Positions 572 to 58,500 of a DNA stretch of 64,000 nucleotides are shown here, piece by piece. The DNA is taken from NCBI GenBank assembly GCA_965637545.1, contig OZ281501.1:1798001-1862000 (forward strand). Reading direction: 5' to 3'. The translations under genes and the position numbers were made by a program. The notes under the pieces are model-generated. The model saw only the letters and a program-made list of their open reading frames with translations. It had not been told where the DNA came from and searched no databases. The stretch's first letter is position 1, and each line of letters starts with the position of its first letter. The DNA comes from Phallusia mammillata (taxonomy: Eukaryota).

Positions 572-2849
572 TTAAGGTCCACACACATCTTGACACAAAT
601 GGGTGATTAGTTCTTTTGCCAATTTCGTTCCTATGTTTGTGTCGCTTTCCCCAACAACAAACACGTGTTCAGGTTCGCCAGCAATGTCCAGAAGTTGTTC
701 CATGTCCAACGGAACGTGGTCATACAAATTGATAAAGATGACGTAAGTCTGCAAAACAAAAAGCTAATTGAGAAACAATACAGTTGCGTCAACTAAAAGG
801 TTTGAGTCATATTCAAATGCACAGAGGAACTTTGGCTAAACTTATGCTGGGCGTTAAAAACTTACCAGAACGCCATCGTCCCTGAGAGCTTGTGCTGCCT
901 CTTTAACATCATCGTTTGAGTTTCTATCAATAGATACGACCAGGACATCCTTGTGTACAAGTGAACGATGAGCTTTGGTATACACGTGTTCACTGACGTA
1001 ACGAAGGGCGTCTCCGACGTTCACCACAGCGCTGTCAGCCACGTCACCTAATACGTCAAATGACATCAACTCATGACAAAAGTTACAATAAATATTTTAG
1101 GACATAAAAACCTTCCGCTGGATGGCGTTGTGCTCCAGGACGAGCACTTTTGGTATCGTTAAAAAATTTACTAAACTCCGGATAAACAACATCACCAAAT
1201 ATGATCCTAGCTTCCCTGTAGTGTTTTGGATCCATACTCCATCCCCTGACAATGCATTGACTTGTTATACATATTTGAAGTTTCTTCTAAAGTTGGTAAT
1301 AGCATAAATGGAAAATGAATGCACACAATCCTTTCACAACGGTTGTTTAAAAGTTGTGATTGTCTACTTCTTTTTCCTTACTCGTAAGCGAGATTCCCAA
1401 ACGCATTGAGTGCTTTGTTGTACCTCTCGTCTGATCTTCTGTTCATCAAGACGACCAAGTCAAACGGTGCATATGGAGGACAGGGATCTAAAACATAATC
1501 TATTAAGCAAAAAGAAGGAGGTCAATGTATTAAGTACTCACGTGCACAACAAGGCTCTGGGCTCGACCACTGGCCGTTTCCCTTGCATTGCAAAGTTGTA
1601 GAGTCGCTTGGGTTAAGATAATATCCAGAGTTGCAGCTGTAGTAACATTGCGAGCCAATCTTGTTGCCATTTGTGCAGTAAACTCTACCGTTTCGAAAGT
1701 TGTTCATGGGAAGACTGCATGTTTGTTGATTTGTATTTGCTAAAAAAGTACAGAATGTGTTCTGAAATCAGCCAAATATTTTTTTTCTAAAAGCTTGTGT
1801 TTAGCAGTTTAATAATTTCACCTGTACATGATTCAGCAACGTTGCAGGAATCTTTGTCACAGCAACAACAGCAAACAGATGAAAACAGGTTGTCGTTGCA
1901 CTGATGCCTTCCGCCGTATTTGTCCAAGTTCTAAATACAGTTTGATTGCTACAGCAGTAAGTAACACTAACTTTATGTCTACTAACTCCTCAAACATCGC
2001 AAGGCTGCAACTGTGAATAAAAACGCGCAACACAACTGGCTTGCAACAAAACTGTCTTGGCTCAGGTGATTATATGGCCAAGCGCGCAAATTGCCTTCTG
2101 TCACGCAAGCGCTTAGTGCCTGCGGTCACCACGCCTTGACAAAACAGTCGAAAGTTGCGAAACAGTAATTTTCACAAGTTGTAATTGAATAATGCAAGAG
2201 AATGATCATAACTTGGATTCTAGTTAAAATAGGTAGTTTGTTGATTGTTTAATATTTTACTTTAATTTGTTTCAAATATTGGATCCACACAACATTTTTA
2301 GAAACTTTAAAAATATTGCCACACTCACCTGTCTACGATCATTCTCGCAGGCCTGTTTCTGTTTGCATTGCTTCCAAATCCTCTGAATAAAAAAGTTTCT
2401 GCGCACTACAGTTGCGCACACGTCCTGAAACGGATAAATTAAAAGGGTAAATATATTGTCATATAACTACTTTTGTCTACATTGCCCCAACATTATGTAC
2501 AGCAGAACTTCGACAACATCCTTAAACAACCATTTTACCTGATTGTTTTGGCAAGTTACCAGTCTTCCTGTTTTCGAGCATCCCTCATTACTTGAAGCTG
2601 AACATTCCCAACACTTTAAACCTGCGACCAACAAAACAATCAAATCAACCTAAACATTATTATCAGCAGTTTGAAAGCAAGAAGTTAAAATATTTTCTGT
2701 AAAAAAATGTAAAAAAAACCTTGCAGGTTGTGGTAAGATCAAGATTAAACGTTTTGTGATTACACATTATAAGTTACTTAACCTTGTGCATTGCAGAGAA
2801 ACATCAACAAAAGAGATGCTTGGAAAACTGCCACCAACATCGAAAACAT
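572..2849 (-). CDS. Secreted LU(Ly6/uPAR-like)-CCP(sushi)-VWA protein, intact copy A, about 383 aa, 9 exons
   Basis: Exons 2849-2783, 2621-2539, 2424-2329, 1930-1822, 1739-1542, 1487-1382, 1245-1112, 1047-866, 748-572. All introns are GT-AG with matching phases and there is no internal stop. Signal peptide MFSMLVAVFQASLLLMFLCNAQG; LU-like LKCWEC...VCCCCCDKDSCN; CCP with C..G..C.YSC..GY...C...GQWS; VWA-like DLVVL...NVGDALRY...VVSID...QLLDIAG. The donor at 1111 (GTTTTT) is weak. Confidence 0.85.
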
Positions 2850-4007
2850 TTTTGTTTTTGTCAAAATCTGCCAAACACAAAGTTAATGTTATAGTCGTAA
2901 ATTGTGATGTCTACTTAAACCTCTTTTAAGTCTCTGTTATTTCTAATATGGATTTAGGAAATTAAAATCTTTGCCCAAAAAAATACAATTGCAGTTTATT
3001 TCTGACATTTTTCAATAAATTAGTGTGATTGCTTTTAATTATTGTAATAAAATACAGCGTAAAGAAATAAAAATGTATAGGTTTCTGAAAACCTAATATT
3101 CAATAAAAACATTTTTTATGCAAAGTTTAATACTTTCTCATTTGCCTGTTAATTTATACAGAGGGTCTCAAAAATCGTGAACACTGGTACACACCGTCAG
3201 AAAACTGCAATGAAATCGTTAATGTTTAATACATCACATATATAAAGGCAACAAGATCGAGTCATCACTTTCACCCAACTATACCTCGCAAGTGTCGGAA
3301 TTTTAAAATGCATTTGCAGAATTATACCAACGCCCCTTTACCCTCTATACTTAGCATATTCCCTCAGGGTAGATAAAAACATCGAATGCTGACCGTTAGA
3401 ATAGATTTATCTACAGATAAAACTTGTATTCAAATTACTTGCGCTATTCGCACGAAATGACCCCACGGATGTGAAACTGAGTTCAAATATTTAAAATTGT
3501 TTTATAACAAGCAAAATCTTCTTAAGATTATGTTAAATAATAAAACATACACACATGGGCGCCGGCAGAAAATTTTGCAAGAGGGGGCAAATTTTGGCTG
3601 ATACTTTACCGCATCAAGAATTTGTTACATATGAAGCCATAAATCGTGTACTTCACAATTGAGTTGCCTAAAAGTTAAAGCATTGAACGACGTCACAAAT
3701 CTCCGCGCTGCCACTTTAATTAGTAAATATTGTTCGAGAAAAACTAAGGTCCCAAGTTCGAATCCCACCGGCCACCACCAAAAGAATAGTTTTGGTTTAC
3801 AACTAATTGCCTCTTTTATACCATTAATGGTTTCGCAACACACTTCTCTCTACGGTAGTTTAGTATGATGCGGCACAGTGGCCAAAAAGCATTTGTTCAA
3901 ACCATGGCTTCTTAGTTTCGTCAGTTTTGTAGCCAGCATTTTTCATATTTATTTTTAGTATACACCACATTGCAAATTTAAACCACATTGTTGAAAATAC
4001 ATCTTCT

Positions 4008-7000
4008 TCAGTAAAAATCACAAATATGCTCACACACGTAAGATTGCAGTGTTGCTGGATTCTTTCCTATCAAAGTTCCGTCTTTGTTTACGATCAGAAC
4101 TCGTTCCTCTGCTCCTGCAATCTCCAGCAGCTGTGTCATGTTGTACTGCTAACTGTCTGTCGGTCGCAGAAACTGAACGAAAGTCTGAACACAAAACATA
4201 TCGTTTTTTTTTAATGCGCATTGGCAAACTACACGCATTTCACGGTAAAAAAATATTTGGGAAATGTATAAGAGTAAGCAAACGTTCCCTGTATGTTGAT
4301 TTTTTTTTCATTTTCGGTTGGCGTGAAAATAACCGATGTAATTTCTCCACAATGCTCTACACTACAGCAAGGCTTAGTCCTTTTTAGCCCTTTGCAGTAT
4401 TTTACATCCATGTTCAACAACTTTTTCAGTTCATATACTTACAGCGACTCCCATACTACGAAGCACCCGAGCAGGGGCCAGCACTTCGTCATCCGAATTA
4501 CTGTCGGTCGCCAAGAAGATCACATCTAAATGATACCGAGACAATCTAGAATGATTTTTATAAATTTCCACAGCATACCACAAAGACTTGCCCACGTTTG
4601 TTAGTCCGCCATCTGAAAGAAAACGAAAACTTTTAAAGGCAACAATTAATTTCATTAGCTAATTATGGACCTAGTTAAAATGTAGCTCTTTTTTGACCTA
4701 TTGACCACAAAACACTATCTGCAAAACTAAGAACTGTTGTGATGGGACACTGGTATTTCTGTAAATAATTTGGACATGTTTGTCAACGTCGAGTCAACTT
4801 TAAATTTCTGGTAATTTAAGTACATCAGAGTAACGGAATTTAAAAGTTAAATAAAAATTCATTTAATCTGATAGCTATCTAATATAATCAGTGTATATCC
4901 ATTCCTCTGTTGCATGTGTTCAGTTAATTCGGTTTGTAAATTACTCTTACAAAAACAAGTTTTGTCGTTTACCAGTTTTAACAAACTTCTGTTTGGAAAT
5001 TGATTTAAAATATTCTGAGTTGTTCCATTTATCCGTTTGTTCGAATGAAATCTCATTTTTAGTGTCGACATCACCACTGAACGGAATTCGCATCACTCTC
5101 ATAGAGTCTTTTGACATCTTGTAGGTTCTGCAAATCAAAGTGGTTCACACACAAAATGAAGTCATAAACTAACATGTTTTTCACTGACAATGCAACTGAC
5201 ATATATTTAACGAACGTATATAATGACCGCCACAGAGCAAATACTTATACCTGTTTTGAGCTGCTAATTTGAAGAAAACAAAACATAGAAGCAAACACAG
5301 AAGTAACAATTGCGAAAAAAATGTTTCTTTGATATTTTTCTGCACAATTTTACCTCAGTATAGATCCAACCACCAAATTAATATGCCATTTGAAAACTTC
5401 CTGATTTTGAGCAGTTACCAATGCTATGAGATCAATCGGTACGTATGGGGGACATGGCTCTAAAAATAATAGCAGATTTAGTCAATAATTGCGTATTTAC
5501 GTGGTTTGCGTTTCCTTTAAAAAAATCGGATAGTAACATTAGGCAAATGGAGAGTTATATCAGCCGAAATTATTATAATGCTGATAGGTCGCACAAAAAG
5601 CACATACATATTTACAAGGATATTTATGAAAACTTACTAACGGTTAGAGCTATTTGGGTTGGGGTGAGATTTTGTAACTAAACTTTTAATCGAACTAACT
5701 TTAAAACTTAGTTTTAAACAAGAAACCTCAAAAAATTATATCTTAACCCTTTCCCTATAGCTATCTCACAATGTGGGGAATGTTTTTTTCAAGTTAAAAT
5801 CAGTTGACAGTCTGATAAAGAACACAAATATATTTCACCGAAAAAGAATCAAGAATGGTAATAGAACAGGTAAAGATTCTTAGATCAAGTTACCAAGATT
5901 TATAACCTTGCCCTATCTGACTGTTAAATAAAAAATTCATGCTTTGCGCCTCGGTATTAAGTAAAGATTCACCTTACGTGAGCTGTAGCGTAAGTAGCTG
6001 TACCAACACTTACTTGTGCAGCATTGTTTTGGCTGACTCCACTTTCCGTCGGACATACACACACATATCCCACTTTCCGGTGTAGGATGGATTGAGAAAC
6101 CATCAGCGTTGCAGAAGAAGTTGCAAACTGAACCTATCTTGTTGGAATCGCTGCATTCCACTTCGCCTCTTGGAAAAATTTGCGGAACAACGGGACACTG
6201 GATAATAGCTGAAAAAATTGTTTTCCGATTATCCACTGCAAATGGTGTTAACAATGTAATCAGATGACAAAAAAGCTAATCTTGATTTTGTATTAATACT
6301 TATATAAAAACATATAATGGTACTATGCCTGCACAAAGTATTAGATTCAAAGTAATTTTGTTCCTTACAGAGTTTTCTTTCATTACTCAGCGTTATTTGG
6401 TAAACGATTAAAGTGTTCTTGTCCATTTTTTCAAATGCCTTATAGAAACTTTATGAGCTCTTCTAACAATTGTATTTTTGCACCGACGTTTAGACGTCCT
6501 ACAGGTCGCCTTCATCAGGGTAAGTAACACGGAAAACGCGTAGTACTGTGCACGATAAACAAAGGAAAAAACAATTTACCGCGAGCACGTCGCAGCGCAA
6601 CAAAAACAATAACAATTGAAACGTCGGTATAAAAATACAATTGCAAGAAGAGCCCCATAAGGTTGATATTTTGTCTGGTAGCAGCAGTTTATGATTGCGT
6701 TTTATAAATTGATATGTTAAATTTTGTACCTTTGCACGCATTGTGCTGGTTACACATCGAAGTATCGCAGCAGCATGTACATGATGAAGAACTTCGGTCG
6801 TAATTACATTGATGCCAGGATTTGAAAGGGCCACGATAGTTCTGCCAAAATACATGTCGAAATAATAACTGATATTCTAATACCATAGAAAAACGACCTT
6901 GCATAAAGTGTCGTTTCTATTGAAACCAACTCATATAAATCGAATCCATCTTTTTTGAATTCAGACATCTTCTGTTTTATCGTATTTGCGTAATAAAATC

Positions 7001-7679
7001 ATAAACTTATTAAACATCGATTTTATTTGAAAAAAAACTGATAAAAACAAAAACTATTTCTGAAACATAAACATTCTGAGATACATATCACATATATATG
7101 TAATTTGCGGCCTACAGTTTTTTCAATGTTCTTTATTTCGGATTATGCCACTGTATTCACCTGTTTTTCATCGTCTTTATATGCGGTTGCTGTTTACGAC
7201 CTTTCCACATAATTTCGCGTTGTTTTTCTCGTCGTACAACCGTCAAACAACTGTCCTGAAACAGATGGACGTCTCCACAACTAGCTATGCGTTTTAAGAT
7301 GTTTTCCACAAATTTTACGTTATCTTTTTTAATGTTATAATGTTCAACTGATGTGATAGACATTGAACATATTTTCCAATTTGTTGACATTCTTGCAAAC
7401 TGCTGGCTTGTTTACACTGCCAACAATGCAAGCCTAAAAATGCAACAAAATATCTACGATTATTTAAAACAACATAATCTGTGGTAAAAAATTTAATAGC
7501 TCAAATAAATACAAACTCAAATGACTTGTTAGAAAATAAAGCATATCGCATTAATTTCAGAGTTTTCTAATTTACCGCTATTTGTTTGCATCAGGCATTT
7601 GATATTTCGGTGTTAAACAGTTACCTTCGGAACAGAATAAAAAATCTGTAAGGAAAACGAGACAAATCAAACTTCACAT
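4008..7679 (-). pseudogene. Full-length LU-CCP-VWA paralog (copy B2), pseudogenised
   Basis: Same 9-exon, same-phase layout as copy A: 7679-7625, 7433-7348, 7255-7161, 6841-6730, 6208-6014, 5459-5354, 5127-4973, 4612-4443, 4184-4008. Lesions: TGA at codon 2; no GT after exon 2 (CAG/TTGAAC); exon 3 is 95 nt rather than 96 (frameshift) and has lost two Cys; in-frame TAG at 4151-4149. Confidence 0.8.
6451..6660 (-). mobile_element. Inverted-repeat fragment of a Penelope-like element pLTR carrying a minimal hammerhead ribozyme (6482-6521, GAAA mutated to TAAA)
   Basis: Minus strand reads ACC CTGATGA A GGCG acctgtagga CGTC TAAA CG TC GGT. Inverted arms of about 42 bp at 6451-6492 and 6619-6660. 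The same flank (caaaaatacaattg..agaagagctc) occurs at 23156-23193 and 57735-57772. Confidence 0.65.
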
Positions 7680-8187
7680 TTTAGCTCAAACGTTGTCACA
7701 CTGAAAAGGTAATTGCACGTACTTAGCCAAGTTGGCAAACTCAGGTGTTGCAGATACGTTTAGCTGTTGTATGCAAATGATTCTGACCTACGTTTATCTT
7801 ATATGCTAATGTAGAATTTGGCTAAACGCGAAGTGGCAGTACAAAGCCGAACCGATAGATTAGCTTAAAGGCACATTACAGGACTTGCCTTAGGGGAATG
7901 TATCGTTTACATAATAATTTATAGGCTATTATTTTAGTTGGTTTGCATTAATGCTATCTGATCAAAAAATCAGTAATAATCATGGTTATCATATCTACAG
8001 ATATGTGCTTGAGTTCTTGATGCTTGCGTTAAAATGCTGAGACATTATAAGTCCAGCTTAGAAAATATTTTGTGCCCAAATATATTTGATTACCTTTTTT
8101 GCAAATCATATCACTATAAAGCAAAGTAAGTGTAGCCACCGGGTTTCCATGCATTCCCTTATGACTAAGCATGGAATAAAAATCTAG

Positions 8188-8266
8188 CTTGCGGTGGGAT
8201 TTGAACCCACCTGTTCTATGACAGGTGGCGCCTGCGGTAGCTGTGGTTTCCAAGTCACATTGCAAG
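8188..8266 (-). repeat. tRNA-like / tRNA-derived SINE-like remnant
   Basis: GTGGGTTCAAATCCCAC T-arm/B-box hairpin, also present at about 32387-32403 (related at about 3760-3775). CTTGC/GCAAG ends and a D-arm-like TGTG..CACA stem, but no proper anticodon arm. Confidence 0.35.
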
Positions 8267-8306
8267 TGTCAAATGTAACATCACATTTCCACACCAAAAT
8301 TGTTAC

Positions 8307-8361
8307 CTTCGGAATCGCAAGACATGTGCTAAAATAGGAGTATTTCAAAAATAAAACCCAT
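8307..8361 (-). pseudogene. Orphan signal-peptide exon remnant of the LU-CCP-VWA family
   Basis: ATG...TCCGAAG/GTAACA, 55 nt, reading MGFIFEILLF*HMSCDSEG. It has the same length and the same TTCCGAAG/GTAAC end as B2 exon 1, with an internal TAG. Confidence 0.55.
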
Positions 8362-8560
8362 ATTTATAACGATTGCAAACTAACTAAAAAACGCAACTAC
8401 ATGAACATATTCACACCTTGTTTGCTGAAGGAAAATACATCAAATACATCGTTTTATTTGTTGAAACAATACTTAGAGAGTGTTACGAAATTAATCAGTA
8501 ATATTTTGTCTTAAAGTGTTTTAATTTGAAGCTTGTGTTAAAAGACATTATCAGATTTAC

Positions 8561-8999
8561 TTGTAAATAATTCAGCAACGTTGCAGGAATCTTTGTCACA
8601 GCAACAACAGCAAACAGATGAAAACAGGTTGTCGTTGCATTGATGCCTTCCACCGTATTTGTCCAAGTTCTAAATACATTTTGGTTGGTGCAAAAAGTGG
8701 CACCAACGCATCACCTAAAATCGTATTGCTGTTACTGATTTAGAACTATAACAGCAACACAACAGGCCCACAACAAAACTACTTTGCTTTAACTGCATGA
8801 TTGAGGCCAATCGCGCAAATTGCGTGTCATAAAAGCGCTTAGTGCCTGTGGTGTCAACTTCTCGCAAAACGACTCCACGCTTTGATGTAACCGTTAAACA
8901 TTAGTTTTAATTTTTTAACACTTTTGAATAATGCTTCATCACTTGATATTGCAGTGGAAGTACCTGATTTGTTGATGTTGCAACCAATATCGAAAACAT
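8561..8999 (-). pseudogene. Internally deleted partial duplicate (B1) of LU-CCP-VWA copy A
   Basis: 8999-8964 (MFSILVATSTNQ/GTACTT) resembles the 5' part of A exon 1. 8669-8561 matches A exon 4 at 104/109 nt. Exons 2-3 are absent. Upstream 10005-10145 is homologous to 3415-3540, which lies upstream of copy A. Confidence 0.7.
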
Positions 9000-10506
9000 T
9001 TTTGTTTCTGGAAAAATCTGCCAAGCACAATTAATGTCAGCAGCAGTGTTGATAAGTTATAATTTGATTCGAAATATGACGATTGTTACCAACACTATCG
9101 ATACTTATTTGATAAGGTGGTAACAGATAAAAAGGATGATTTTGTTTTGCAAACAATGTCGTTTTTCTTTCTTCTTTCATGTGCATTTCTTTGATTCTAT
9201 GCTTTAATATGGGGTGAGAACTTCTGAAATCAGTTGTCGTTTTGAAAGATGATGTTGAATATGACATTACGGATTATCTTGAAAACCATAGCTGCCACAG
9301 GAGCACAACTTGTAATTAACACCGCGGAACGTACTACTCAAAAATCATGTTATCGCGAAGATTGATTTTGCACAGGCTGGATCTTTTCATGCATAGATAC
9401 CATGATTTAAATCTGCTGCTTAAAGTCTTGATTACACTTTTTATCCTTACTTAGGATAAGGAGTTTGTAACAGAGAGTCAATTTTATCCTATATAGTTAA
9501 CTAAAGCATTCACTGTTTGGGAGTACATTTAATTAAGTTAAAATTTAGCCTGTTTCGGTACGTGTTGTTTTACGCTGTTATGTAATAATAATATTTTTGT
9601 TGGTTTTTACGCTGTCCTTTCGCAGAATTACAATGAGGTAATTTTTGATCAGTAATAGACATTTTTAGAAGTATAACATGTGTGTATCAAGCGTAAAGAA
9701 ATAAAAACTCAAAGGTTTTGTCACAACCAACAATCAATAAAAAGCAGTTTTTACACAAGGAGCAACTATTGCTCTGATCACTTGTTAATTCAAATGTGTT
9801 CGTACCACTTATCAAAAAGGTCAAAAGGTAGTAAACACAAAATAGTCACCGCTGTTGTCCTTCTATGGTAGGTGCCTCGCAAGTGCCGGAACTCTAATTT
9901 ATTTGCAACATTAAACAAATGCCCCTATTCTCCTTATTTTTACATTTTCCCTCAGGCCAAATGTGAACTGGTTCGAATGTTGATCGTGGTTGTTGATTTG
10001 TCTGCAGATAAAACTTGCAGTTGGTGTAATTTGATTTTCTTTGGCATAATCCGCAAGAAATGACCCCACTGATTTAAAGTTAAGTTCACATATTTAAAGT
10101 GTGTTATTACAAGAACATTTTTTATCGTAAGATTATGTTAAAATTCATTGGCATATTCTTTTCCACTGTTATATGCATGTTCAATAAGTTTGCGATTATA
10201 CGAAGTAAAAACAAATAAGCAACTGTAAGTGAAGTGGTGCAAAATAGGCAAAAGCTAAACAAATTTTCATAGGAAAGCTGTTTTAAACAACCAAAAGGCA
10301 TTTAAGTGGAACAAAGCACAAGTTTGGCAAATTCTACTGTCAACGACATTTTATCAAAAGCACTGTTGGGCAACTTTCTCAAACCTAATCCGTTAACTGC
10401 AGTTTAAATTATGGTCAATTGCTTTTGCAAACAAAGAACAGCCATAATATTGTGTTAGGAATAAAACAAACAACGTCGATACTATAGGTCCACAAAATGG
10501 CGCTGT

Positions 10507-18900: not shown

Positions 18901-21900
18901 GACGTCACAGCGCGTTTAGCTATTTGCAAACAGCTGCGCGTCTAAAAACTTTTGAACAGTGACTGTGACGCAACAACGATGCGATTGTTTGCGTGGAAAT
19001 CATCACTTCCGGCCCGCCCCCTCAAAATGGTCATCAACAGCGAAACCAGCAACAGCAAACAACAAGTGACAAACTGCTTTCGTATATTCGTCAGCGTAAC
19101 AGAGGTTAACTGGGGTCTCTTGTAAACATAAAGCCAACTTAAAGTAGCTCATGGCAAAAGAAATAACAAACACTCTAATCAACATGCCGTATTTGCTGGT
19201 GTGTATACACGCTTCGGGGCTGATCCCAGTTATGAATTTATGTTCATCTTAGCTGATCAGCAGAAACAATTATGAAGGGAAAAGATACATAATCTACTTG
19301 GTGCGATAAAGTTTAAACCTCAAATCAGCTCTATTCAACCACAAGTCTTCAAGTGCCATAGAAATACATATTTTTGTGGGACAGATAATCTACATATCTA
19401 AATGAGTTTATAATAGGCACCGGTTCATGCAAAACGTGCTAACCGTACGCACGCTTTATCAAGGGGAGGCATTTGTGACAATTTATGGCGGTATTGGGTG
19501 ACACCACTGATTAGAATATTCACAAAATGGTCGATACTTCCATGCGTTATAACTCCCTTGTGACAGGCTGCCCATACGTGCATAATAATTGCTTCAAGCT
19601 GCCACCAAATGTAACTGCTGCTATTAAGGGTGCCTCATATATGGTAGCATATGGCGTTTGAATCAGGAATTTAGGTTGCTAGTTGTTGAAAAAATTTACC
19701 CAAAAACATTGGGTCTTATATCGAATTTGATAATAGTTCGAAAGAGTAAACGAGTTTATAACAGGTAACGACGATTGGTGTAACTTAGCTCTAATGTTTA
19801 AATAGTAAAGTTGGCCATAAAGGTATAATAAACAAAATTGAGCGTCGGGTAACTTACCATCCAAGATTCCCGTATTGGTTGATAAATTTCATGTAGTCAC
19901 AAGCCTGGATCCATCCTACAGTCCAAGTCTCCTTTCGTCGAATCGGGGGCATGATGACCTGGGCGTTGGCGCGGAAATAAGGCGTCCTGTACCGGAGAAC
20001 AATCGGGGAATATTCTTCTATCACAGTCGGCGATTGATCGATGGTGGCCTGTACATCACTGTGTATGTTAGTACGGCATGGGCCCACTTTGGACTTGTTG
20101 GAGACGCTGTGGAAACATCCCATGTCAGTTTGATCGGGGGTGATTATACCCAGGTTTCTGTTTTTCGGTGACGCTGCTTGTGCGGCGTACAAAAGCTTGC
20201 TGAAAACAATCGAGGGATTAGACGAGGGAAGAGAGCTTGTTCCTCCGAAGAGAAGACAAAACGGATCGCAACAGTGATGAGGTTTTCTCCTAGGGTTCTT
20301 TGAGAGATCTTGCTCGTCAAAGCACTTGTGGTTGTTGGAAAACGATCGCTGCTTCGAAAGATCCTTGCTGAAGCCGAGATGACCTTGCAACTGATCTTGT
20401 GTTCGTCCACACGAATTTGATCGTTTAAACACGTTCAGGTGTCTTCGTTCCACAGTCCGAGGTCCGCTTGGCGTGATCAACGCAGTCGACTCCTCCGTTT
20501 GCGATGGACTTCGATTCTGCTGTTCACGTTTTGATTGACAAGCCGGACAACGCTCTTCGATCCTACAGAGACAACGGACACTTGCCGCTATGTCTTGATC
20601 AAAAGTGCTACTCTCAGTCTGTGCTTCCTTTTGCTGATGGTTGAGTCTGCCCGAAGCGGTCTCCTTTTGAGCGCCTCTCCTCTGACGTAACGGCAACGTC
20701 ACAGTCCTCGGCACCTGCTGTGACGTATATAACGCGTCACAGGTTTTGGTGTGAAACAGTGGCGACGAACAATCGCAAATTCGCGTCGTTTGTTTTCGCG
20801 CTGACTGTAGTGACTTGTTTTTAGCAGCGCAAGTCGTCGACGACGTCGGCTTGCTGGATGAGGTAGACTTGTGACGAGCAACTTGCAGCTTCAAGAGACC
20901 CGTGTCTGTGTGTTTTGCGACCAATAAGTCGCAGGATCGCGGTTCGCAGACCAGTTCGTCCAGTCCAGTGTGCTTTAGTCTTCTTCTTAAATACAAAGGT
21001 CGCTCGCTAGTGGTCGCATTCGTGTTCCTATTTAAGGCCAAGTAATCGCTGTTGTCCGTAAAATCGCCAAAGTTGTAACCCTGAAGAGGAGACAGATTTT
21101 CGACCTTCGTGGTTCTGGGAAGAAAGCTCCTTTGTGAATCAATCCCACGCTGAGCACGCCTGTACAGTCCTGGGTCAGACCTGGTTGGTTTTAGAGTGGA
21201 TTTTGTCCAGGAGCTGGGGTTGACAGTGGAACAATGAACACGCGAAACCCGCGAAACCGGCGCGATTTTTGTTATTGTGGTGGAAAACGTGTTGAAGTCT
21301 TCAAAGAGATGTAGTTTCTTGTTGGAATCCAGGTTTTGGACACAGTTTGATGTTGGAGTTTCGGTATCGGGAAAAGCCGGGAGTTTGGAGATCTCCTGGA
21401 GGGAGGAAAGAGGATTCGTGTTGTAGCTAAGTCTTCTTCCACTGCGCTTTGTGAAAATCTCTGTGCTATTTGGATCCTCTTCTTCAAGTCCCGACGTTAT
21501 TGAATCTTCTTCGTTTTTAGTTATTAGGTCACAATCTCCTACTGATGACACCACCGTTGAGTTGTCGTTGTTTTCGTTTGCGTTAGCTGAAACACGACAA
21601 AAATATTTGGCTATCAAATAAACAACTAAACTCAAATAGGTAATATGGAATTAACAGCAGTTTCAATAAAAGCAAACAATTATTATCTGACTCAAATGTT
21701 TCAAATTGAGAGGAACAGGGAAAAAGTTATCTTGGAAGTTTTTCGTTTAAATGTATAACCTTAAACAATGCTCAAACAAAATATATGTTTGACCCCACCT
21801 GTAAAAACGCTTCCCGCTCCAGATTGCAACAAAAGATTAGAAGTTCGTTCGCAGTCTGTATCTTTCGTAGTTTCGGTTAACCGTTGACGTTTGTTTTCTG

Positions 21901-22272
21901 TTTCTTGCAAGTTGGACCTGAAAACCATGTGATATATAGCCTTGCCTCTTATGTATAAAAGTAAAGTTATAATATTGAATAGTGTAAAACTTACTGAATT
22001 TTTCGTTTTCTTTCGCAAATGAAATCCGTATTTGACTGCACGTCCTTATTTTGACCAAAGGAGGCAGGTCGCTTTGAAACTAATCGCTGGATGTGGTCGT
22101 TTTGCCGTAAATCCGGATTTGCTTGCTGTGCTAAACTTTGAAGTACGTCCCTAATAAGTGAAGTCAAATCCTGGCCGTTGCACTCGCTGTGGTTGGCCTT
22201 CTGTGCAAGAGGCAGGAGGTTTATAGTCCTAGTGGTTGTTGGCGCTACCTCGTGTTGGCGCTTTTGTATCAT
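15988..22272 (-). CDS. FAM78: FAM78 family protein with a long N-terminal extension
   Basis: Exons 22272 (or acceptor 22344)-21995, 21917-21799, 21586-19858, 17272-17125, 16563-15988, phases consistent. Recognisable FAM78 motifs: MGCFHS, SPIVLRYRTPYF, TWTVGWIQAC, SSWEIP, SDSDGVSYPWYGNTTE, MNDNFYPSVTW, RDQSFVTWL, SANNAQTLIWRP. The 5' end is uncertain, and A versus B orthology cannot be assigned. Confidence 0.9.
18471..19030. promoter_or_regulatory. Promoter-like motif cluster inside a FAM78 intron
   Basis: YY1-like CGCCATTTTG at 18471, CRE at 18900, and ETS CACTTCCGG at 19004 abutting GC box CCCGCCCC at 19013 and CAAAATGG at 19023. Confidence 0.35.
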
Positions 22273-23140
22273 TGAGCTGGAGATGGGAGCCCGGCGTCCG
22301 ACATCCGGCCTTGGGGATGCACCGCTAGATGGCGAGAAGGAGCACTATGCATATCACATAAACTACGTGCAAGGCTCTTTGATGATCTGTGCAAGAGAAT
22401 ATAGGTTTATACATCGAAAGATTAAAGCTTAAAAAGTGAACACAACTTTTCGCCTGTTACTACATGTCATCAAAAACAAAACCTCTTGCTTGAGCCTACT
22501 TGTACAGGTCTGTTCTATCATATCATGAACACTTTAACATAATTGAATCAATTTTCCAAGGAACTAAATACATTGCAGAAACTATACAACAAATCAGTTA
22601 CGTTAAAAACCCTCAGATGATAACGAGGTTTACAGAAAACACTTAACCACCAAGCTAGTAGCGATGATCCAAATGAGACGTTGAAACGTCGGATGAGTAA
22701 TACATATTTGCCGGTTGAGCAAAAAGAAAACTTTTTGAACTATGCTGGCTGCCACACTATACTCATGTTTGTTACAATGACAGCAGCAGGTTAAGGTTGA
22801 TCTAATGCCCTACCGACCTTTGCTTCACACTGGTCTGTAGATACGATTAACATAGCGAATGACCTATTGGCGACAATAGGATTTAACAATACAGCTCTAC
22901 TTGGCGCATAATACATTAACAGTTAGAATAGGTTCGGGTTTGAAAATAGGTGCACTCAATACCTGATAACAGGTTTTATCTATTGTGCGTATCAATAACC
23001 GACAATTAAATGCCGTGTTTGATACCTCAATATACGCTTCATAACAATACACAGAAATCTGTTCCAAAAGCCTTTTAGCGATGTAACTTTACGTTTTTAG
23101 GATCATTATATTCCTCAGAATATACGCTAATAAAAGTATT

Positions 23141-23193
23141 TCTGTATAGGACGTCGAAACGTCGGAATAAAATTACATTTGCCAGAAGAGCTC
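23141..23193 (+). repeat. 3' half of the hammerhead-bearing repeat (a further degenerate copy lies at about 22676-22720)
   Basis: ctgtataggacgtcGAAACGTCGGaataaaattacatttgccagaagagctc matches the 6451 and 57671 family; there is no upstream CTGATGA. Confidence 0.55.
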
Positions 23194-55500: not shown

Positions 55501-58500
55501 TGTTAAATGCAAATAATCTAATTAGAGTTCACCGATAAGATTCGAAGAACACATTCAAATGTCAATGTCAACGTTGTTTGATCAGATACACTTTACTCAG
55601 CTGGCTTAAGTTATAAATACCCAAACACAAGTTCATAACATGGATTTGAAATGTTGTTTATTAACAACATAACTTCCAGATGTAGTAAAAGATTAATCGC
55701 AAAGTTTTTCCCGCCTAAAATTGTTTTCAAAACAACGTAATATTAGCAAGTCGATTTTAAAAGTTTATTAACCTCAGTTTGAAAATATCTACATTAATAT
55801 TTAGTACTTTTGGATAACATCGTATTTAATCGTGTCATCGGGAAATAGAACGCTATTGCTTATGTCATGCAAAATATATTTAATTCACACGTCCTCTAAC
55901 AGCGAATGATATTTGTTTGATATATATATAGCAAACATATTTAAGGGTACATTATGCAGTGAAATATATTCTATCACATGATTGAGTTCACTCATACTTA
56001 ACGCAGAGTCACGTAGTGTATGCATAATTAGTACGGATTAATGAATATACACATACTTAAAATAATCGTGTATGAGGCGGCCTTTAAAAAGCGGGTGCAA
56101 TAGCGTAGTATACCAGAAAAGAAAATCAACACGAACGGTCTTTAACTGACGCCAACCCCAAAGCGTAAATGCGTAAATGTCATAGTGAAGGCAAATCCAA
56201 CCAAGTTACATAAACTCTTCTCATTTTTTCAACAAACATTGAAACTACGCTCCTTTTAAGCTTACAATTACTCCAAGGCATGTCAAATCTACAAATATTT
56301 ACCCCCGTCTTAAAGCAACATTTTGTTCACAGACAAATGTGACATTGGCGATATTACTGACCCTGCTGAGCGGCGTCATCCAACTACTTATGGCAGTGTT
56401 CAAACTTGGATTTCTTGTGCGTTATATCTCGCATCCAGTAATAGTCGGGTTTACGTCAGCCGCCTCCGTTGTGATATCGATGACACAGATCAAGGTAAGA
56501 CAGTTTTTAAGACTATACTTGATGAATAAACAATAAAGATTATGCAACTTTAAGCAATAGTGTAAAACTTTTAACAAAAAAAATCAGAGTCAGTATGTGT
56601 GTATATAACATGACGACGTTTCGACAAGTGCTAAAGTCATCATCAGGTCACCAGAATTAAAAGCAACAGAACCATACAACTAGGTGCCGCAACCTAGTCA
56701 CGTTTTACACACAAATACTGGCTCTGATTTTTTTTGGTCAGGTTATTCAAAACCGGGAATGCCATAGTCTACCTTATTAAAACTTTTAATTTTATCGTCT
56801 TCCTAGTGTCTTCCCACAAACAAGCACTGTCAGAAAAATATTTAATTACAGTATAAGTGATATGTATCACTGTAGTTTAGAACTGATCAGATTTCAACTT
56901 TTTGCTCAGAAAATCTTTGGGATTTCAACTCCTAGAGGATTTTTCGAAACGATTTATCACTTCTTTCGTGACATTGCCCTCACAAAGTACGTACCTGCAA
57001 AAAACTTTGGACAAATTTGTACTAATCCTATGCAGCCAATTTGTTTCAGCACATTATAGTCCGTTTTGACAATCATTTTTGCTGATAATTTTCTTATACG
57101 TTATTTCCTTTTTTCATCATGCGTCTTAAAACTGGAACCTTTGTCCTATTAATAAACCGGCATAGCCACACACATAAGATACACAAAACATATTTCATAT
57201 ATCGTGGCTCAGCATGGCATTTTCAATAATACTTTGTTTGTTATTTTGTAATTAGTTGACCAACTTTATTTTTGATTTAAATACCGCAATTTTTTTCTTT
57301 AGACACTGGGATCTGATTCTTGGTCTGTCGAGCATGGTGATACTCTATCTGCTCAAATACTCGAAGAACCGATGGTCAGAATCACGACAAGGCGACAAGA
57401 CTGCGATCAAGGTTCTCAGGAAAATTCTCTGGGTGTTTGGCACCGGTGAGTAATTATGTCCATGCGGTGGCGCAAGTGAGTTACGAAATAGTTCAACATA
57501 AAAACTCTTGCCCAAATAGCTCACGGCGTTAGACATAGACTAAGAAACCAGATTCGTACGTTTGGGCTGGAACCCCGTATAAAAGCATGCTTGCCAAACG
57601 TTTGAAACTCAATGATATGAACTGTTTTTGTTACAGCTTTCACTTTGAACCACATAGTGTTAACTATATAGAGCTCATCTGGCAAATGTATTTTTGTTCA
57701 TCAGGGTAAATTAAGGCGACCTGTATTGGACGTCGAAACGTCGGTACAAAAATACAATTGCCAGAATAGCTCCATGTATGCAAGATAGCAGCAACAGCTA
57801 TTATACAAATAATATTTAATTGCTCTGTAATATGTATACCACGATACAGGCTGTACGAATTACTAATGTTGTTTGTTAAGGTCGCAACGCAGTTATTGTA
57901 ATCGTTTCCGCCGCGATTGCTTACGGAATAACCGACTTGGAAGGACCAGTAAACGCGCGACCCCTCACCCTAACGCAGAACATCACTGGAGGCGTGCCAG
58001 GATTTGCAGTTCCTGCTTTCTCGTACGATGTACCAAACACAAATCAAACAATCTACTTTCCCGAGCTTATTTCGTCGCTAGGTAGCGCTCTTGCCATCAT
58101 ACCGCTGATGGGATTTCTTGAGGCCATCGCCATTGCTAAAGCTTTTGGTAAGTCGTAGACGTTTGCATCTCCTGATTTGTTTTTTTTTGCTGAATGGTCA
58201 AGAATTGTAAATCGGATTCGTCTTTTCGGTTCAGGCTGATTTTTTTTTCGTTTAACTTTTTACATCGCTAATTTTATACGGGTCGAATTGCAGGCGTGTA
58301 AACATGCTCAGATCCTAAATTCGGGTACAAATACAACTTTCACATGGTGGGCTATAAATGGTACGATAATGTACATGTCCCACATTTTCCTAATCATAAA
58401 CTGAAATGTTGTAGGTCGCAAAAACAATTACAAGGTCGACCCGACACAAGAACTTTTCGCCATCGGCACAAGCAACCTGATTTCCTCATTTGTTGGCTCC

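What the first reader, a model, noticed from the sequence alone, without database searches (positions are those of the whole stretch)
572..9000. Tandem birth-and-death cluster of a secreted LU-CCP-VWA protein family
Seen: an intact gene, a full-length pseudogene and two remnants, all in the same orientation and sharing one exon/phase layout. The ORF track misses this because the domains are split over small exons. The live and dead copies are strongly diverged in amino acid sequence but keep the Cys frame. Established: LU (three-finger), CCP and VWA modules are typical of complement regulation, adhesion and gamete recognition, but I know no characterised protein with this three-domain, anchorless order. 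Inference: a lineage-specific, fast-turnover recognition or immune family, such as a complement-like, allorecognition or gamete-surface effector.
Basis: partly seen in the sequence, partly recalled or inferred. Interest (0 to 1): 0.75.

Follow-up and report, generated by a model that had tools for sequence, protein, structure and literature searches.

The report
Sea-squirt three-finger–sushi–VWA gene array edge
This stretch of the sea squirt Phallusia mammillata genome holds one intact gene, one dead gene and a partial duplicate of a large, unstudied, sea-squirt-only family of small secreted proteins; the family is real and expanding and decaying as claimed, but it evolves under constraint and looks more like a binding adaptor than a fast-evolving immune or mating receptor.

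Summary
On the minus strand, nine GT-AG exons (2849..572) give a clean 383-aa ORF: signal peptide, Cys-rich three-finger (LU)-like module, one sushi/CCP, one VWA, no anchor. Copy 2 (7679..4008) keeps the layout but has four disabling lesions. 8556-9956 is a partial DNA duplicate of copy 1.

The window is only the right edge of the picture. The genome (Phallusia mammillata) has at least 20 such loci on this chromosome and about 57-59 exon-level matches genome-wide. Two paralogs have spliced database proteins that match my models. Copy 1's own transcription could not be tested.

Sushi and VWA pass Pfam cut-offs. LU fails them but is supported by the Cys pattern and by predicted-structure matches to Ly6/uPAR clusters.

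The family is a one-CCP offshoot, lacking the VWA metal-site motif, of ascidian LU-(CCP)n-VWA "P-selectin-like" proteins. These include Ciona's Ci-sushi-type genes.

dN/dS is 0.13-0.32, so there is no sign of rapid adaptive evolution. Paralogs are mosaics of exchanged blocks.

The scan found this family before on two other stretches of this genome (s1-351706, s1-395746).

Verdict: real, unstudied, moderately interesting; immune or gamete role unsupported.

The parts
2783..2849 (-). Copy 1 exon 1: ATG and signal peptide (22 codons + 1 nt)
   Evidence: ATG at 2849, donor gt; hydrophobic MFSMLVAVFQASLLLMFLCNAQ(G).
2539..2621 (-). Copy 1 exon 2: LU finger 1 (Cys 1-4)
   Evidence: ag/gt, 83 nt, phase 1 to 0. 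Aligned in register with 10 paralogs and the Clavelina proteins.
2329..2424 (-). Copy 1 exon 3: LU finger 2 (Cys 5-7, 'CKQKQAC')
1822..1930 (-). Copy 1 exon 4: LU finger 3 with the 'SVC-x-CCC-x4-CN' signature
   Evidence: This exon has 57 exon-level matches in the genome.
1542..1739 (-). Copy 1 exon 5: one sushi/CCP domain
   Evidence: Pfam PF00084, E 3e-11, 44 bits against a cut-off of 20.7, on the exon alone.
1382..1487 (-). Copy 1 exon 6: 'PCPPY' linker and first VWA strand; the MIDAS position reads LMNRRSD instead of DxSxS
1112..1245 (-). Copy 1 exon 7: VWA, variable middle part
866..1047 (-). Copy 1 exon 8: VWA core
   Evidence: Pfam PF00092, 26.6 bits against a cut-off of 23.8, on the exon alone. 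59 exon-level matches in the genome.
572..748 (-). Copy 1 exon 9: VWA C-terminal part, 'HLCQDVCGP', stop TAA at 574-572; no hydrophobic tail
7625..7679 (-). Copy 2 exon 1 relic: ATG followed at once by TGA (7676-7674)
7348..7433 (-). Copy 2 exon 2; the donor is lost (CAG|tt at 7347-7346)
7161..7255 (-). Copy 2 exon 3: 95 nt (-1 frameshift), two conserved Cys lost
6730..6841 (-). Copy 2 exon 4 (open, splice sites kept)
6014..6208 (-). Copy 2 exon 5, CCP (open, splice sites kept)
5354..5459 (-). Copy 2 exon 6
4973..5127 (-). Copy 2 exon 7 (placed by position, phase and splice sites; too diverged for tblastn)
4443..4612 (-). Copy 2 exon 8, VWA core; its closest open-frame kin are on C5 17.55-17.58 Mb (47-54% identity)
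4008..4184 (-). Copy 2 exon 9 with an in-frame TAG at 4151-4149
   Evidence: An inverted relic just outside the window reads Glu at that codon.
8556..8852 (-). Partial duplicate of copy 1: orphan exon 4 (8561-8669, both splice sites kept, last Cys lost) plus part of intron 3
   Evidence: 76% DNA identity to 1817-2126.
8979..9037 (-). Partial duplicate of copy 1: 5' flank and the first 21 nt of exon 1 (ATG at 8999-8997)
   Evidence: 87% identity to 2829-2889.
9690..9956 (-). Upstream-flank homology of the partial duplicate (9690-9753 and 9875-9956, matching 3056-3118 and 3284-3368)

Best explanation
The window carries the right-hand end of a tandem array (C8 about 1.768-1.807 Mb) of a Phallusia mammillata gene family. 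The family encodes small secreted proteins built from a signal peptide, a three-finger (Ly6/uPAR-like) module, one sushi/CCP module and one VWA module.

Copy 1 is an intact member. Copy 2 is a dead member of a more distant subfamily. The third element is a partial duplicate of copy 1.

The family is a shortened offshoot of the ascidian LU-(CCP)n-VWA proteins that databases call 'P-selectin-like', the kind to which Ciona Ci-sushi belongs. It has one CCP instead of several and has lost the DxSxS metal-site motif of the VWA. It arose before Phallusia and Clavelina split. It then multiplied separately in each lineage by tandem duplication, block exchange between copies, and decay.

Inferred mechanism: the protein is exported, is held rigid by about 11-12 disulfides, and acts outside the cell as a soluble binder or bridge. 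The three-finger and sushi modules would offer protein-binding surfaces. The metal-site-less VWA would bind a partner without a metal ion, as vWF A1/A3 and collagen VI A domains do.

Shown: anatomy, domains, copy states, family extent, constraint, and transcription of two paralogs. Inferred: secretion, metal-independent binding, and any partner.
For: Gene model and lesions.

Domains:
- Sushi E 3e-11 and VWA 26.6 bits (cut-off 23.8) on single exons.
- VWA fold on paralog P0154: Z 18.9, rmsd 2.4 A over 167 residues, to the collagen VI alpha3 N2 domain.
- LU: Cys 1-7 at CD59-like spacing and an invariant 'CC-x4-CN' ending.
- LU: sub-threshold matches to two LU-clan Pfam models in two members.
- LU: atlas structural matches of P0154 residues 22-118 to nine Ly6/uPAR clusters, TM 0.59-0.79.
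- LU: AF2 pLDDT 83-89 over residues 21-80, with the expected hairpins.

Family extent: 59 and 57 exon-level matches genome-wide; about 22 loci on C8 with conserved exon sizes and phases.

Transcription of paralogs: P0056 equals the modelled 1.981 Mb copy with 0 mismatches in 213 aa. P0154 matches the 1.989 Mb copy at 359 of 362 residues.

Relatives: Clavelina short forms are 34% identical to copy 1 over the full length, E 1e-55. Long forms in Ciona, Clavelina and Styela have an intact DSSSS motif. One split, supported 100/100, separates the short forms from the long ones, and each species' copies form their own clade. The published Ci-sushi primers encode 'QACEANEA' and 'SVCRCCC'.

Constraint: dN/dS 0.13-0.32.

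Mosaic paralogs: per-exon nucleotide identity switches from 94-98% to 67-74% within one gene pair.
Against:
- The joined 383-aa model was never put through Pfam, homology or folding. Domain calls rest on single exons and on paralog P0154, which is 51% identical.
- No LU-type Pfam model reaches its cut-off (17.4 bits against 21.2 and 31.5).
- The LU fold evidence compares predicted models with predicted models. A fold of the LU part alone could not be made by reference.
- Secretion is read from sequence only.
- No binding partner, tissue or stage is known.
- Whole-domain dN/dS cannot exclude positive selection at a few sites, and block exchange blurs such estimates.
Confidence: 0.7

Rival explanations
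1. Humoral immune or complement-like recognition family. Many diversified secreted copies would recognise microbes or altered self, with CCP-VWA acting as in C2/factor B.
For: - Large, lineage-specific tandem expansion with birth and death.
- Block exchange between copies creates new LU/VWA combinations.
- Foldseek's top matches to the whole model are factor B and C2, which share the CCP-then-VWA order.
- CCP matches by sequence are to complement regulators.
Against: - dN/dS is 0.13-0.32 with no domain near 1.
- The DxSxS metal site, kept in the C2/factor B type of VWA, is lost.
- There is no serine-protease domain.
- The factor B/C2 match has rmsd about 12 A and reflects domain order only.
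- The VWA alone is nearer to collagen VI and vWF A domains (Z 18.9) than to C2a/Bb (Z 13.9-14.4).
Confidence: 0.15
2. Developmental signal at larval metamorphosis, like the long relative Ci-sushi. That gene is a JNK target needed for tail-cell apoptosis in Ciona.
For: - The Ci-sushi primers encode this family's LU landmarks.
- Ci-sushi's role is as stated in PMC4389792, PMC8495957 and PMC13225635.
- Sushi and VWFA proteins are prominent among proteins that change at Ciona metamorphosis.
Against: - The short forms are a separate, deeply split branch (100/100). They have lost the metal site and all but one CCP.
- A single developmental role does not explain dozens of copies.
- That Ci-sushi itself has a VWA was not verified here. 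Its identity with P0160 is excluded at the primer site.
Confidence: 0.15
3. Gamete-surface or allorecognition effector. Polymorphic copies would mediate self/non-self discrimination.
For: - Some Ly6/uPAR proteins act in fertilisation, for example zebrafish Bouncer (10.1101/354688, listed).
- CCP-containing polymorphic genes serve allorecognition in other ascidians (my own knowledge, not tested here).
- Tandem expansion and mosaicism.
Against: - The protein is soluble and anchorless, whereas Bouncer-type action needs membrane attachment.
- Purifying selection throughout.
- The three differences between P0154 and the genome copy are too few to indicate hypervariability.
- No gonad expression data.
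Confidence: 0.07
4. Copy 1 is itself silent or on its way to decay, so the window holds no working gene. Only other array members function.
For: - No transcript for copy 1 was found.
- Its neighbours on both sides are broken.
- About a third of the C8 loci are damaged.
Against: - A 383-codon ORF over nine exons with all 16 splice sites intact.
- All family-invariant Cys are kept.
- dN/dS against its closest kin is 0.27-0.32, which indicates constraint since divergence.
Confidence: 0.1

Closest known systems
Ascidian LU-(CCP)n-VWA proteins auto-named 'P-selectin(-like)' (Ciona intestinalis XP_002125765.3 = P0160; Clavelina P0159, P0161, P0165; Styela P0155, P0156), the kind to which Ciona Ci-sushi (KH.C11.274, ci0100139289) belongs
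   Same: Signal peptide; the same LU-like module (LxCWxC ... CKQxxAC ... SVCxCCC-x4-CN); CCP; a 'PCC-x3-CPP' junction; VWA; a C-terminal C-x3-C; no anchor. The profile match is E 6e-129. The Ci-sushi primers encode the LU landmarks.
   Different: The long forms have 2-10 CCPs and an intact DSSSS metal site. The window's family has one CCP and no DxSxS, and it lies on its own branch (100/100). Ci-sushi's VWA was not verified here.
Ly6/uPAR (LU, three-finger) proteins such as CD59, PSCA, LYPD1 and LYPD6B
   Same: Cys 1-7 spacing and the 'CC-x4-CN' ending. The predicted fold matches these clusters at TM 0.59-0.79 by query.
   Different: No Pfam LU model reaches its cut-off. There are four extra Cys, including a run of three to five. 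The module is fused to CCP and VWA rather than standing alone with a GPI anchor.
Complement factor B / C2
   Same: A CCP followed directly by a VWA; these are the top whole-model Foldseek matches.
   Different: No serine protease, one CCP instead of three, an added LU module, and the metal site lost. The VWA is less similar (Z 13.9-14.4) than to collagen VI (Z 18.9).
Collagen VI / vWF A / matrilin-type VWA domains and mussel PTMP1
   Same: The best structural and sequence matches of the VWA part (6snk_B Z 18.9; 4cn8 Z 17.1). Cys near both ends of the domain, as in vWF A domains.
   Different: These are large multi-VWA matrix proteins without LU or CCP. Database names for the family such as 'collagen alpha-1(XIV)-like' reflect the VWA only.
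SVEP1 and selectins (the names given automatically to family members)
   Same: They contain sushi repeats; SVEP1 also has a VWA.
   Different: The family has no C-type lectin, EGF, pentraxin or transmembrane part. The names are misnomers.

Membership tests
Ly6/uPAR (LU, three-finger) domain superfamily | Cys pattern: N-terminal LxCxxC, eight to ten Cys at set spacing, C-terminal CC-x4-CN | tested here: met
   Copy 1 exons 2-4 align in register with 10 paralogs and with the Clavelina, Styela and Ciona proteins. Cys 1-7 and 'CCC-x4-CN' are invariant. Four extra Cys are present.
Ly6/uPAR (LU, three-finger) domain superfamily | Match to a curated LU-clan profile above its cut-off | tested here: not met
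   Single exons give nothing, and whole P0143 gives nothing. P0154 against Toxin_TOLIP scores 17.4 bits (cut-off 21.2). P0157 against UPAR_LY6_2 scores 17.4 bits (cut-off 31.5).
Ly6/uPAR (LU, three-finger) domain superfamily | Three-finger beta fold | tested here: met
   Tested on paralog P0154 (51% identical to copy 1), not on copy 1 itself. The atlas model of residues 22-118 matches nine LU clusters at TM 0.59-0.79. The AF2 model shows hairpins at 25-45 and 51-72 and a strand at 99-106, with pLDDT 83-89 over residues 21-80. Both sides of the comparison are predictions. A fold of the LU part alone was not possible by reference.
Ly6/uPAR (LU, three-finger) domain superfamily | Disulfide connectivity 1-5, 2-3, 4-6, 7-8, 9-10 | not testable with these tools
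   Model coordinates are not returned; this needs a solved structure or mass spectrometry.
Sushi / CCP / SCR | Pfam PF00084 above its cut-off; four consensus Cys and the conserved Trp | tested here: met
   Exon 5 alone: E 3e-11, 44 bits against 20.7. The Cys and 'GxW' are kept in all paralogs. Two extra Cys are present.
VWA fold | Pfam PF00092 above its cut-off and an alpha/beta Rossmann-like fold | tested here: met
   Exon 8 alone: 26.6 bits against 23.8. Whole P0143: E 1.3e-16. Model of P0154: Z 18.9 to 6snk_B.
Metal-binding (MIDAS-competent) VWA, as in integrin I domains and C2/factor B | DxSxS motif after the first strand | tested here: not met
   Copy 1 reads LMNRRSD, other paralogs read similarly, and Clavelina reads LMHVRDA. 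The long forms keep DSSSS.
Complement C2 / factor B | Three CCPs, a VWA and a C-terminal serine protease | tested here: not met
   The protein ends 5 residues after the VWA's last Cys. No protease family appears in Pfam.
Selectins | C-type lectin, EGF, CCPs, transmembrane helix | tested here: not met
   No lectin or EGF match appears in any family member, and there is no C-terminal hydrophobic stretch.
Ascidian LU-(CCP)n-VWA family ('P-selectin-like', Ci-sushi type) | Signal peptide, LU module with SVCxCCC-x4-CN, at least one CCP, PCC-x3-CPP junction, VWA, C-terminal C-x3-C | tested here: met
   All are present in copy 1. The profile links short and long forms (E 1.9e-113 to 6e-129). The tree puts the short forms on one well-supported branch within the family.

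The most novel reading that the evidence does not exclude
The arrays are a combinatorial diversity system. Block exchange between tandem copies re-pairs different three-finger halves with different VWA halves. This would give sea squirts a repertoire of secreted two-headed binders used for recognition (immune, self/non-self or settlement cues). Such a repertoire would have evolved independently of vertebrate and other known invertebrate repertoires, from a Ci-sushi-type developmental gene.
Probability: 0.1. Interest if true: 0.7.

Novelty: new variant of a known kind. Interest (0 to 1): 0.4.

Why it matters
All three modules are well-known extracellular binding domains, but this fusion has not been studied in either its short or long form. 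Databases label its members misleadingly as P-selectin-like, SVEP1 or collagen XIV-like, because the three-finger module escapes Pfam.

Recognising that module ties a large unstudied ascidian gene family to Ci-sushi, the one member of the kind with a known phenotype. It also gives a concrete hypothesis for how such proteins engage partners.

The arrays also offer a clean case of tandem birth-and-death with block exchange in a chordate close to vertebrates.

It does not, on present evidence, open a new kind of immune or mating system.

Tried and rejected
- A scan of metagenome contigs for the contig that encodes P0157 found nothing. I had wanted a contiguous LU-coding stretch from it.
- Candidate intronless LU copies on C3 turned out to be read-through of short introns. 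The LU module could therefore not be folded alone by reference.
It was assembled only inside sandbox scripts, for coordinates, pairwise comparison, dN/dS and the tree.
- Exon-by-exon Pfam gave nothing for the three LU exons.
- The first alignments with exon rows were smeared by MAFFT and were discarded (A2 and A4).
- The profile search with exon 8 was flooded by multi-VWA giants. Only the single-stretch hits were useful.
- Whole-model Foldseek and VIA searches are dominated by the VWA and say nothing about LU.
- A supposed second remnant at about 8300 rests on 13 nt and was rejected.
- tRNA-like stretches gave no ARAGORN or Rfam match.
- Literature searches for LOC100175501 and for Ly6+sushi+VWA in ascidians found no description of the family.
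- The original Ci-sushi paper is not held.
- Equating P0160 with Ci-sushi was rejected: the forward-primer peptide differs at that site.

Full report
WHAT IS IN THE SEQUENCE.

Reading the minus strand of 572-2849 gives nine exons with GT-AG introns. They join to 1152 nt, that is 383 codons and a stop, with no internal stop.

A tblastn of that model against the whole window finds family pieces only between 572 and 9037.

Copy 2 (7679-4008) has the same nine exons, with sizes 55/86/95/112/195/106/155/170/177 against 67/83/96/109/198/106/134/182/177, and the same phases. It carries four independent lesions:
- a TGA directly after the ATG (7676-7674);
- a lost exon-2 donor (7347-7346);
- a 95-nt exon 3, which shifts the frame and has also lost two conserved Cys;
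- a TAG in the last exon (4151-4149).

The stretch 8556-9956 is a DNA-level partial duplicate of copy 1. It holds:
- orphan exon 4 plus part of intron 3 (76% identity);
- the first 21 nt of exon 1 with its 5' flank (87% identity);
- two further upstream-flank blocks.

The two remnants are parts of one duplicate. That duplicate runs past the stated end. Copy 2 does not keep the whole Cys frame.

HOW THE SEARCHES WERE RUN.

It exists only in sandbox scripts, where it was used for coordinates, pairwise comparison, dN/dS and the tree. Family scans were run exon by exon by reference. Whole-protein tests were run on database proteins that the searches returned.

DOMAINS.

On single exons, exon 5 is a sushi/CCP (PF00084, E 3e-11). 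Exon 8 passes the VWA cut-off (26.6 bits against 23.8).

The three LU exons give nothing piecewise. Even whole family proteins reach no LU-type Pfam cut-off. There are only two sub-threshold matches over the right residues: P0154 to Toxin_TOLIP (E 0.008) and P0157 to UPAR_LY6_2 (E 0.005).

The positive evidence for LU is of three kinds:
- Cys pattern. The first seven Cys fall at CD59-like spacing (CD59's spacing is from my own knowledge). The ending 'CC-x4-CN' is invariant across Phallusia, Clavelina, Styela and Ciona members. There are four extra Cys.
- AF2 model. The model of paralog P0154 has mean pLDDT 75.5, and 83-89 over residues 21-80. It shows a hairpin, a long hairpin, a helix and a strand.
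- Atlas comparison. The atlas's own model of P0154 residues 22-118 matches nine Ly6/uPAR clusters at TM 0.59-0.79 by query. It also matches an 878-aa chordate Sushi+VWA cluster at TM 0.78.

These are comparisons between predicted models. A fold of the LU part alone could not be made, because no contiguous coding stretch is available by reference.

The VWA fold is firm: Z 18.9, rmsd 2.4 A over 167 residues, to the collagen VI alpha3 N2 domain. C2a and Bb score lower, at Z 13.9-14.4. Foldseek's top whole-model hits are factor B and C2, but at rmsd about 12 A, so they reflect only the CCP-then-VWA order.

The DxSxS metal-site motif is absent in every Phallusia and Clavelina short form; copy 1 reads LMNRRSD.

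The protein ends five residues after the last Cys and has no hydrophobic tail. It is therefore neither GPI-anchored nor membrane-spanning, as far as sequence can tell.

THE WINDOW IS ONLY AN EDGE.

In the window's own genome (240 Mb, window at C8:1798001-1862000), exon 8 has 59 matches and exon 4 has 57.

After fetching the neighbouring DNA, exon-by-exon mapping shows about 22 loci on C8, in four blocks: 1.768-1.807, 1.906-1.913, 1.965-1.993 and 18.616-18.630 Mb. Exon sizes and phases are conserved (83/96/106-112/198-201/106/131-149/170-182/171-192).

At least eight loci give complete open models. Others show stops, frameshifts, truncated exons or lone exons. An inverted relic lies just left of the window; its exon 9 reads Glu where copy 2 has TAG.

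Copy 2's nearest open-frame kin are on C5 17.55-17.58 Mb (47-54% identity in exon 8), so it belongs to another subfamily.

More distant arrays lie on C3, C5 and C2. Birth-and-death is thus well supported.

The scan had already met the family on two other stretches of this genome (s1-351706, s1-395746). Their summaries agree with what I found independently.

SPECIES AND TRANSCRIPTION.

A profile built from exon 8 of 15 paralogs recovered several useful proteins among many multi-VWA giants.

- P0056 is a 213-aa Phallusia mammillata entry. It equals my model of the 1.981 Mb copy with no mismatch.
- P0154 is a 385-aa Phallusia entry found in a later search. It matches the 1.989 Mb copy at 359 of 362 residues, with all nine exons joined as modelled.

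This identifies the genome. It validates the splice models and shows that at least two paralogs give spliced products.

It does not show that copy 1 is transcribed.

Copy 1 is 51% identical to P0154. It is 34% identical, collinear over the full length, to Clavelina lepadiformis P0143.

WIDER FAMILY.

A profile of short and long members finds the following:
- Ciona intestinalis 'P-selectin' (XP_002125765.3, 918 aa): signal peptide, the same LU module, eight sushi repeats, a VWA with DSSSS, and the same C-terminal Cys pair;
- Clavelina and Styela proteins with 2-10 sushi repeats;
- several unnamed environmental or transcript contigs.

In a maximum-likelihood tree of 23 proteins:
- the one-CCP forms lacking the metal-site motif sit on one side of a 100/100 branch;
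- Phallusia copies (99/98) and Clavelina copies (100/99) form separate clades;
- copy 1's sister is the copy at 1.9655 Mb, 167 kb away.

Pseudogenes, and the 18.6 Mb block whose exon 7 I could not model, were left out of the tree. The root is set by one long matrilin branch.

The genome also keeps long forms on C7 (19.568-19.575 Mb) and C1 (25.074-25.080 Mb).

The only member of this kind with a known phenotype is Ciona Ci-sushi (KH.C11.274, 'p-selectin'). It is a JNK target needed for apoptosis of tail cells at metamorphosis, as cited in PMC4389792, PMC8495957 and PMC13225635. Its published qPCR primers translate to 'QACEANEA' and 'SVCRCCC', which are the LU landmarks of this family. At that site it differs from P0160, so the two are not the same gene. 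I could not check Ci-sushi's VWA.

EVOLUTIONARY MODE.

Pairwise Nei-Gojobori dN/dS among eight intact paralogs is 0.13-0.32. LU is 0.09-0.24, CCP 0.18-0.64 and VWA 0.09-0.44. dS is saturated for distant pairs.

The CCP exon has much lower dS than its flanks. Per-exon nucleotide identity switches abruptly within gene pairs. For example, exons 2-5 are 94-98% identical but exons 6-9 only 67-74% between the 1.981 and 1.989 Mb copies. Copy 1's LU half resembles its neighbours, while its VWA half resembles the 1.9655 Mb copy.

The copies are therefore mosaics made by conversion or unequal crossing-over. This also means that the concatenated tree and the dN/dS values are averages over different histories.

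INTERPRETATION.

What is shown: a real, constrained, multiplied and decaying family of anchorless LU-CCP-VWA proteins, restricted so far to ascidians and derived from longer LU-(CCP)n-VWA proteins.

What is inferred: they are secreted, disulfide-rigid binders or bridges whose VWA works without a metal ion.

A role related to Ci-sushi is a lead, not a finding.

A literature search found no description of the short family. The recent survey of invertebrate LU architectures does list VWA among partner domains in a figure legend, but it does not mention sushi or tunicates.

I rate it as a new variant of a known kind, of moderate interest.

Noticed in passing
C8 loci L029/L035 and window 572-2849 (per-exon comparison): Paralogs are mosaics: nucleotide identity switches between exon blocks within one gene pair (for example 94-98% in exons 2-5 against 67-74% in exons 6-9). 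The CCP exon is homogenised across the array (dS 0.1-0.9 where the flanks are saturated). This points to gene conversion or unequal crossing-over.
   Followed up: partly
G000:C8:1797279-1797870 (+), just left of the window: An inverted relic of a copy-2-type gene: a 'CCCCC' exon-4 scrap and an exon 9 that reads Glu at the codon that is TAG in copy 2.
   Followed up: partly
window 8561-9037 (-) relative to copy 2 at 7679-4008: The duplicated exon-1 start (36 nt, then gt) and the orphan exon 4 keep splice signals. Their phases would allow splicing to each other and on into copy 2's exon 2. A chimeric, non-coding transcript is conceivable but untested.
   Followed up: no
window 6446-6664: A MITE-like element, 219 bp with 46-nt inverted ends (80% complementary), inside intron 4 of copy 2. 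Related ends occur at 57710-57775 and 23147-23193.
   Followed up: partly
window 3740-3790 (+) and 8190-8240 (-): tRNA-like 3' halves (a T-arm plus an acceptor stem ending in CCA at 3755-3777; a 'GGTGGGATTTGAACCCACC' stretch near 8205). These are probably SINE or tRNA relics. ARAGORN and Rfam find nothing, and the first is unique in the window.
   Followed up: partly
G000:C8:1770352-1770540 (+): A lone last exon, 94% identical to the last exon of P0056 (whose gene lies 210 kb away). It sits among minus-strand array members as an orphan exon.
   Followed up: no
G000:C7:19567828-19574782 (-) and G000:C1:25073914-25079921 (+): Long LU-(CCP)n-VWA genes, the Phallusia counterparts of Ciona 'P-selectin', lie on other chromosomes, apart from the short-form arrays.
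   Followed up: partly
L025 (G000:C8:1758001-1768000): A 200-N assembly gap lies next to the leftmost array member (1767666-1769403). Its missing exons 7-9 may therefore be an assembly matter rather than a deletion. The gap was left untouched.
   Followed up: no
P0114 / P0152 (Clavelina lepadiformis): A CCP-VWA relative without the LU module. It has an N-terminal hydrophobic stretch instead and nests within the Clavelina short-form clade, so the LU module can be lost.
   Followed up: partly
window 20123-22344: Another first-reader note on this window (s1-361589) concerns a FAM78-like gene. I did not examine it.
   Followed up: no
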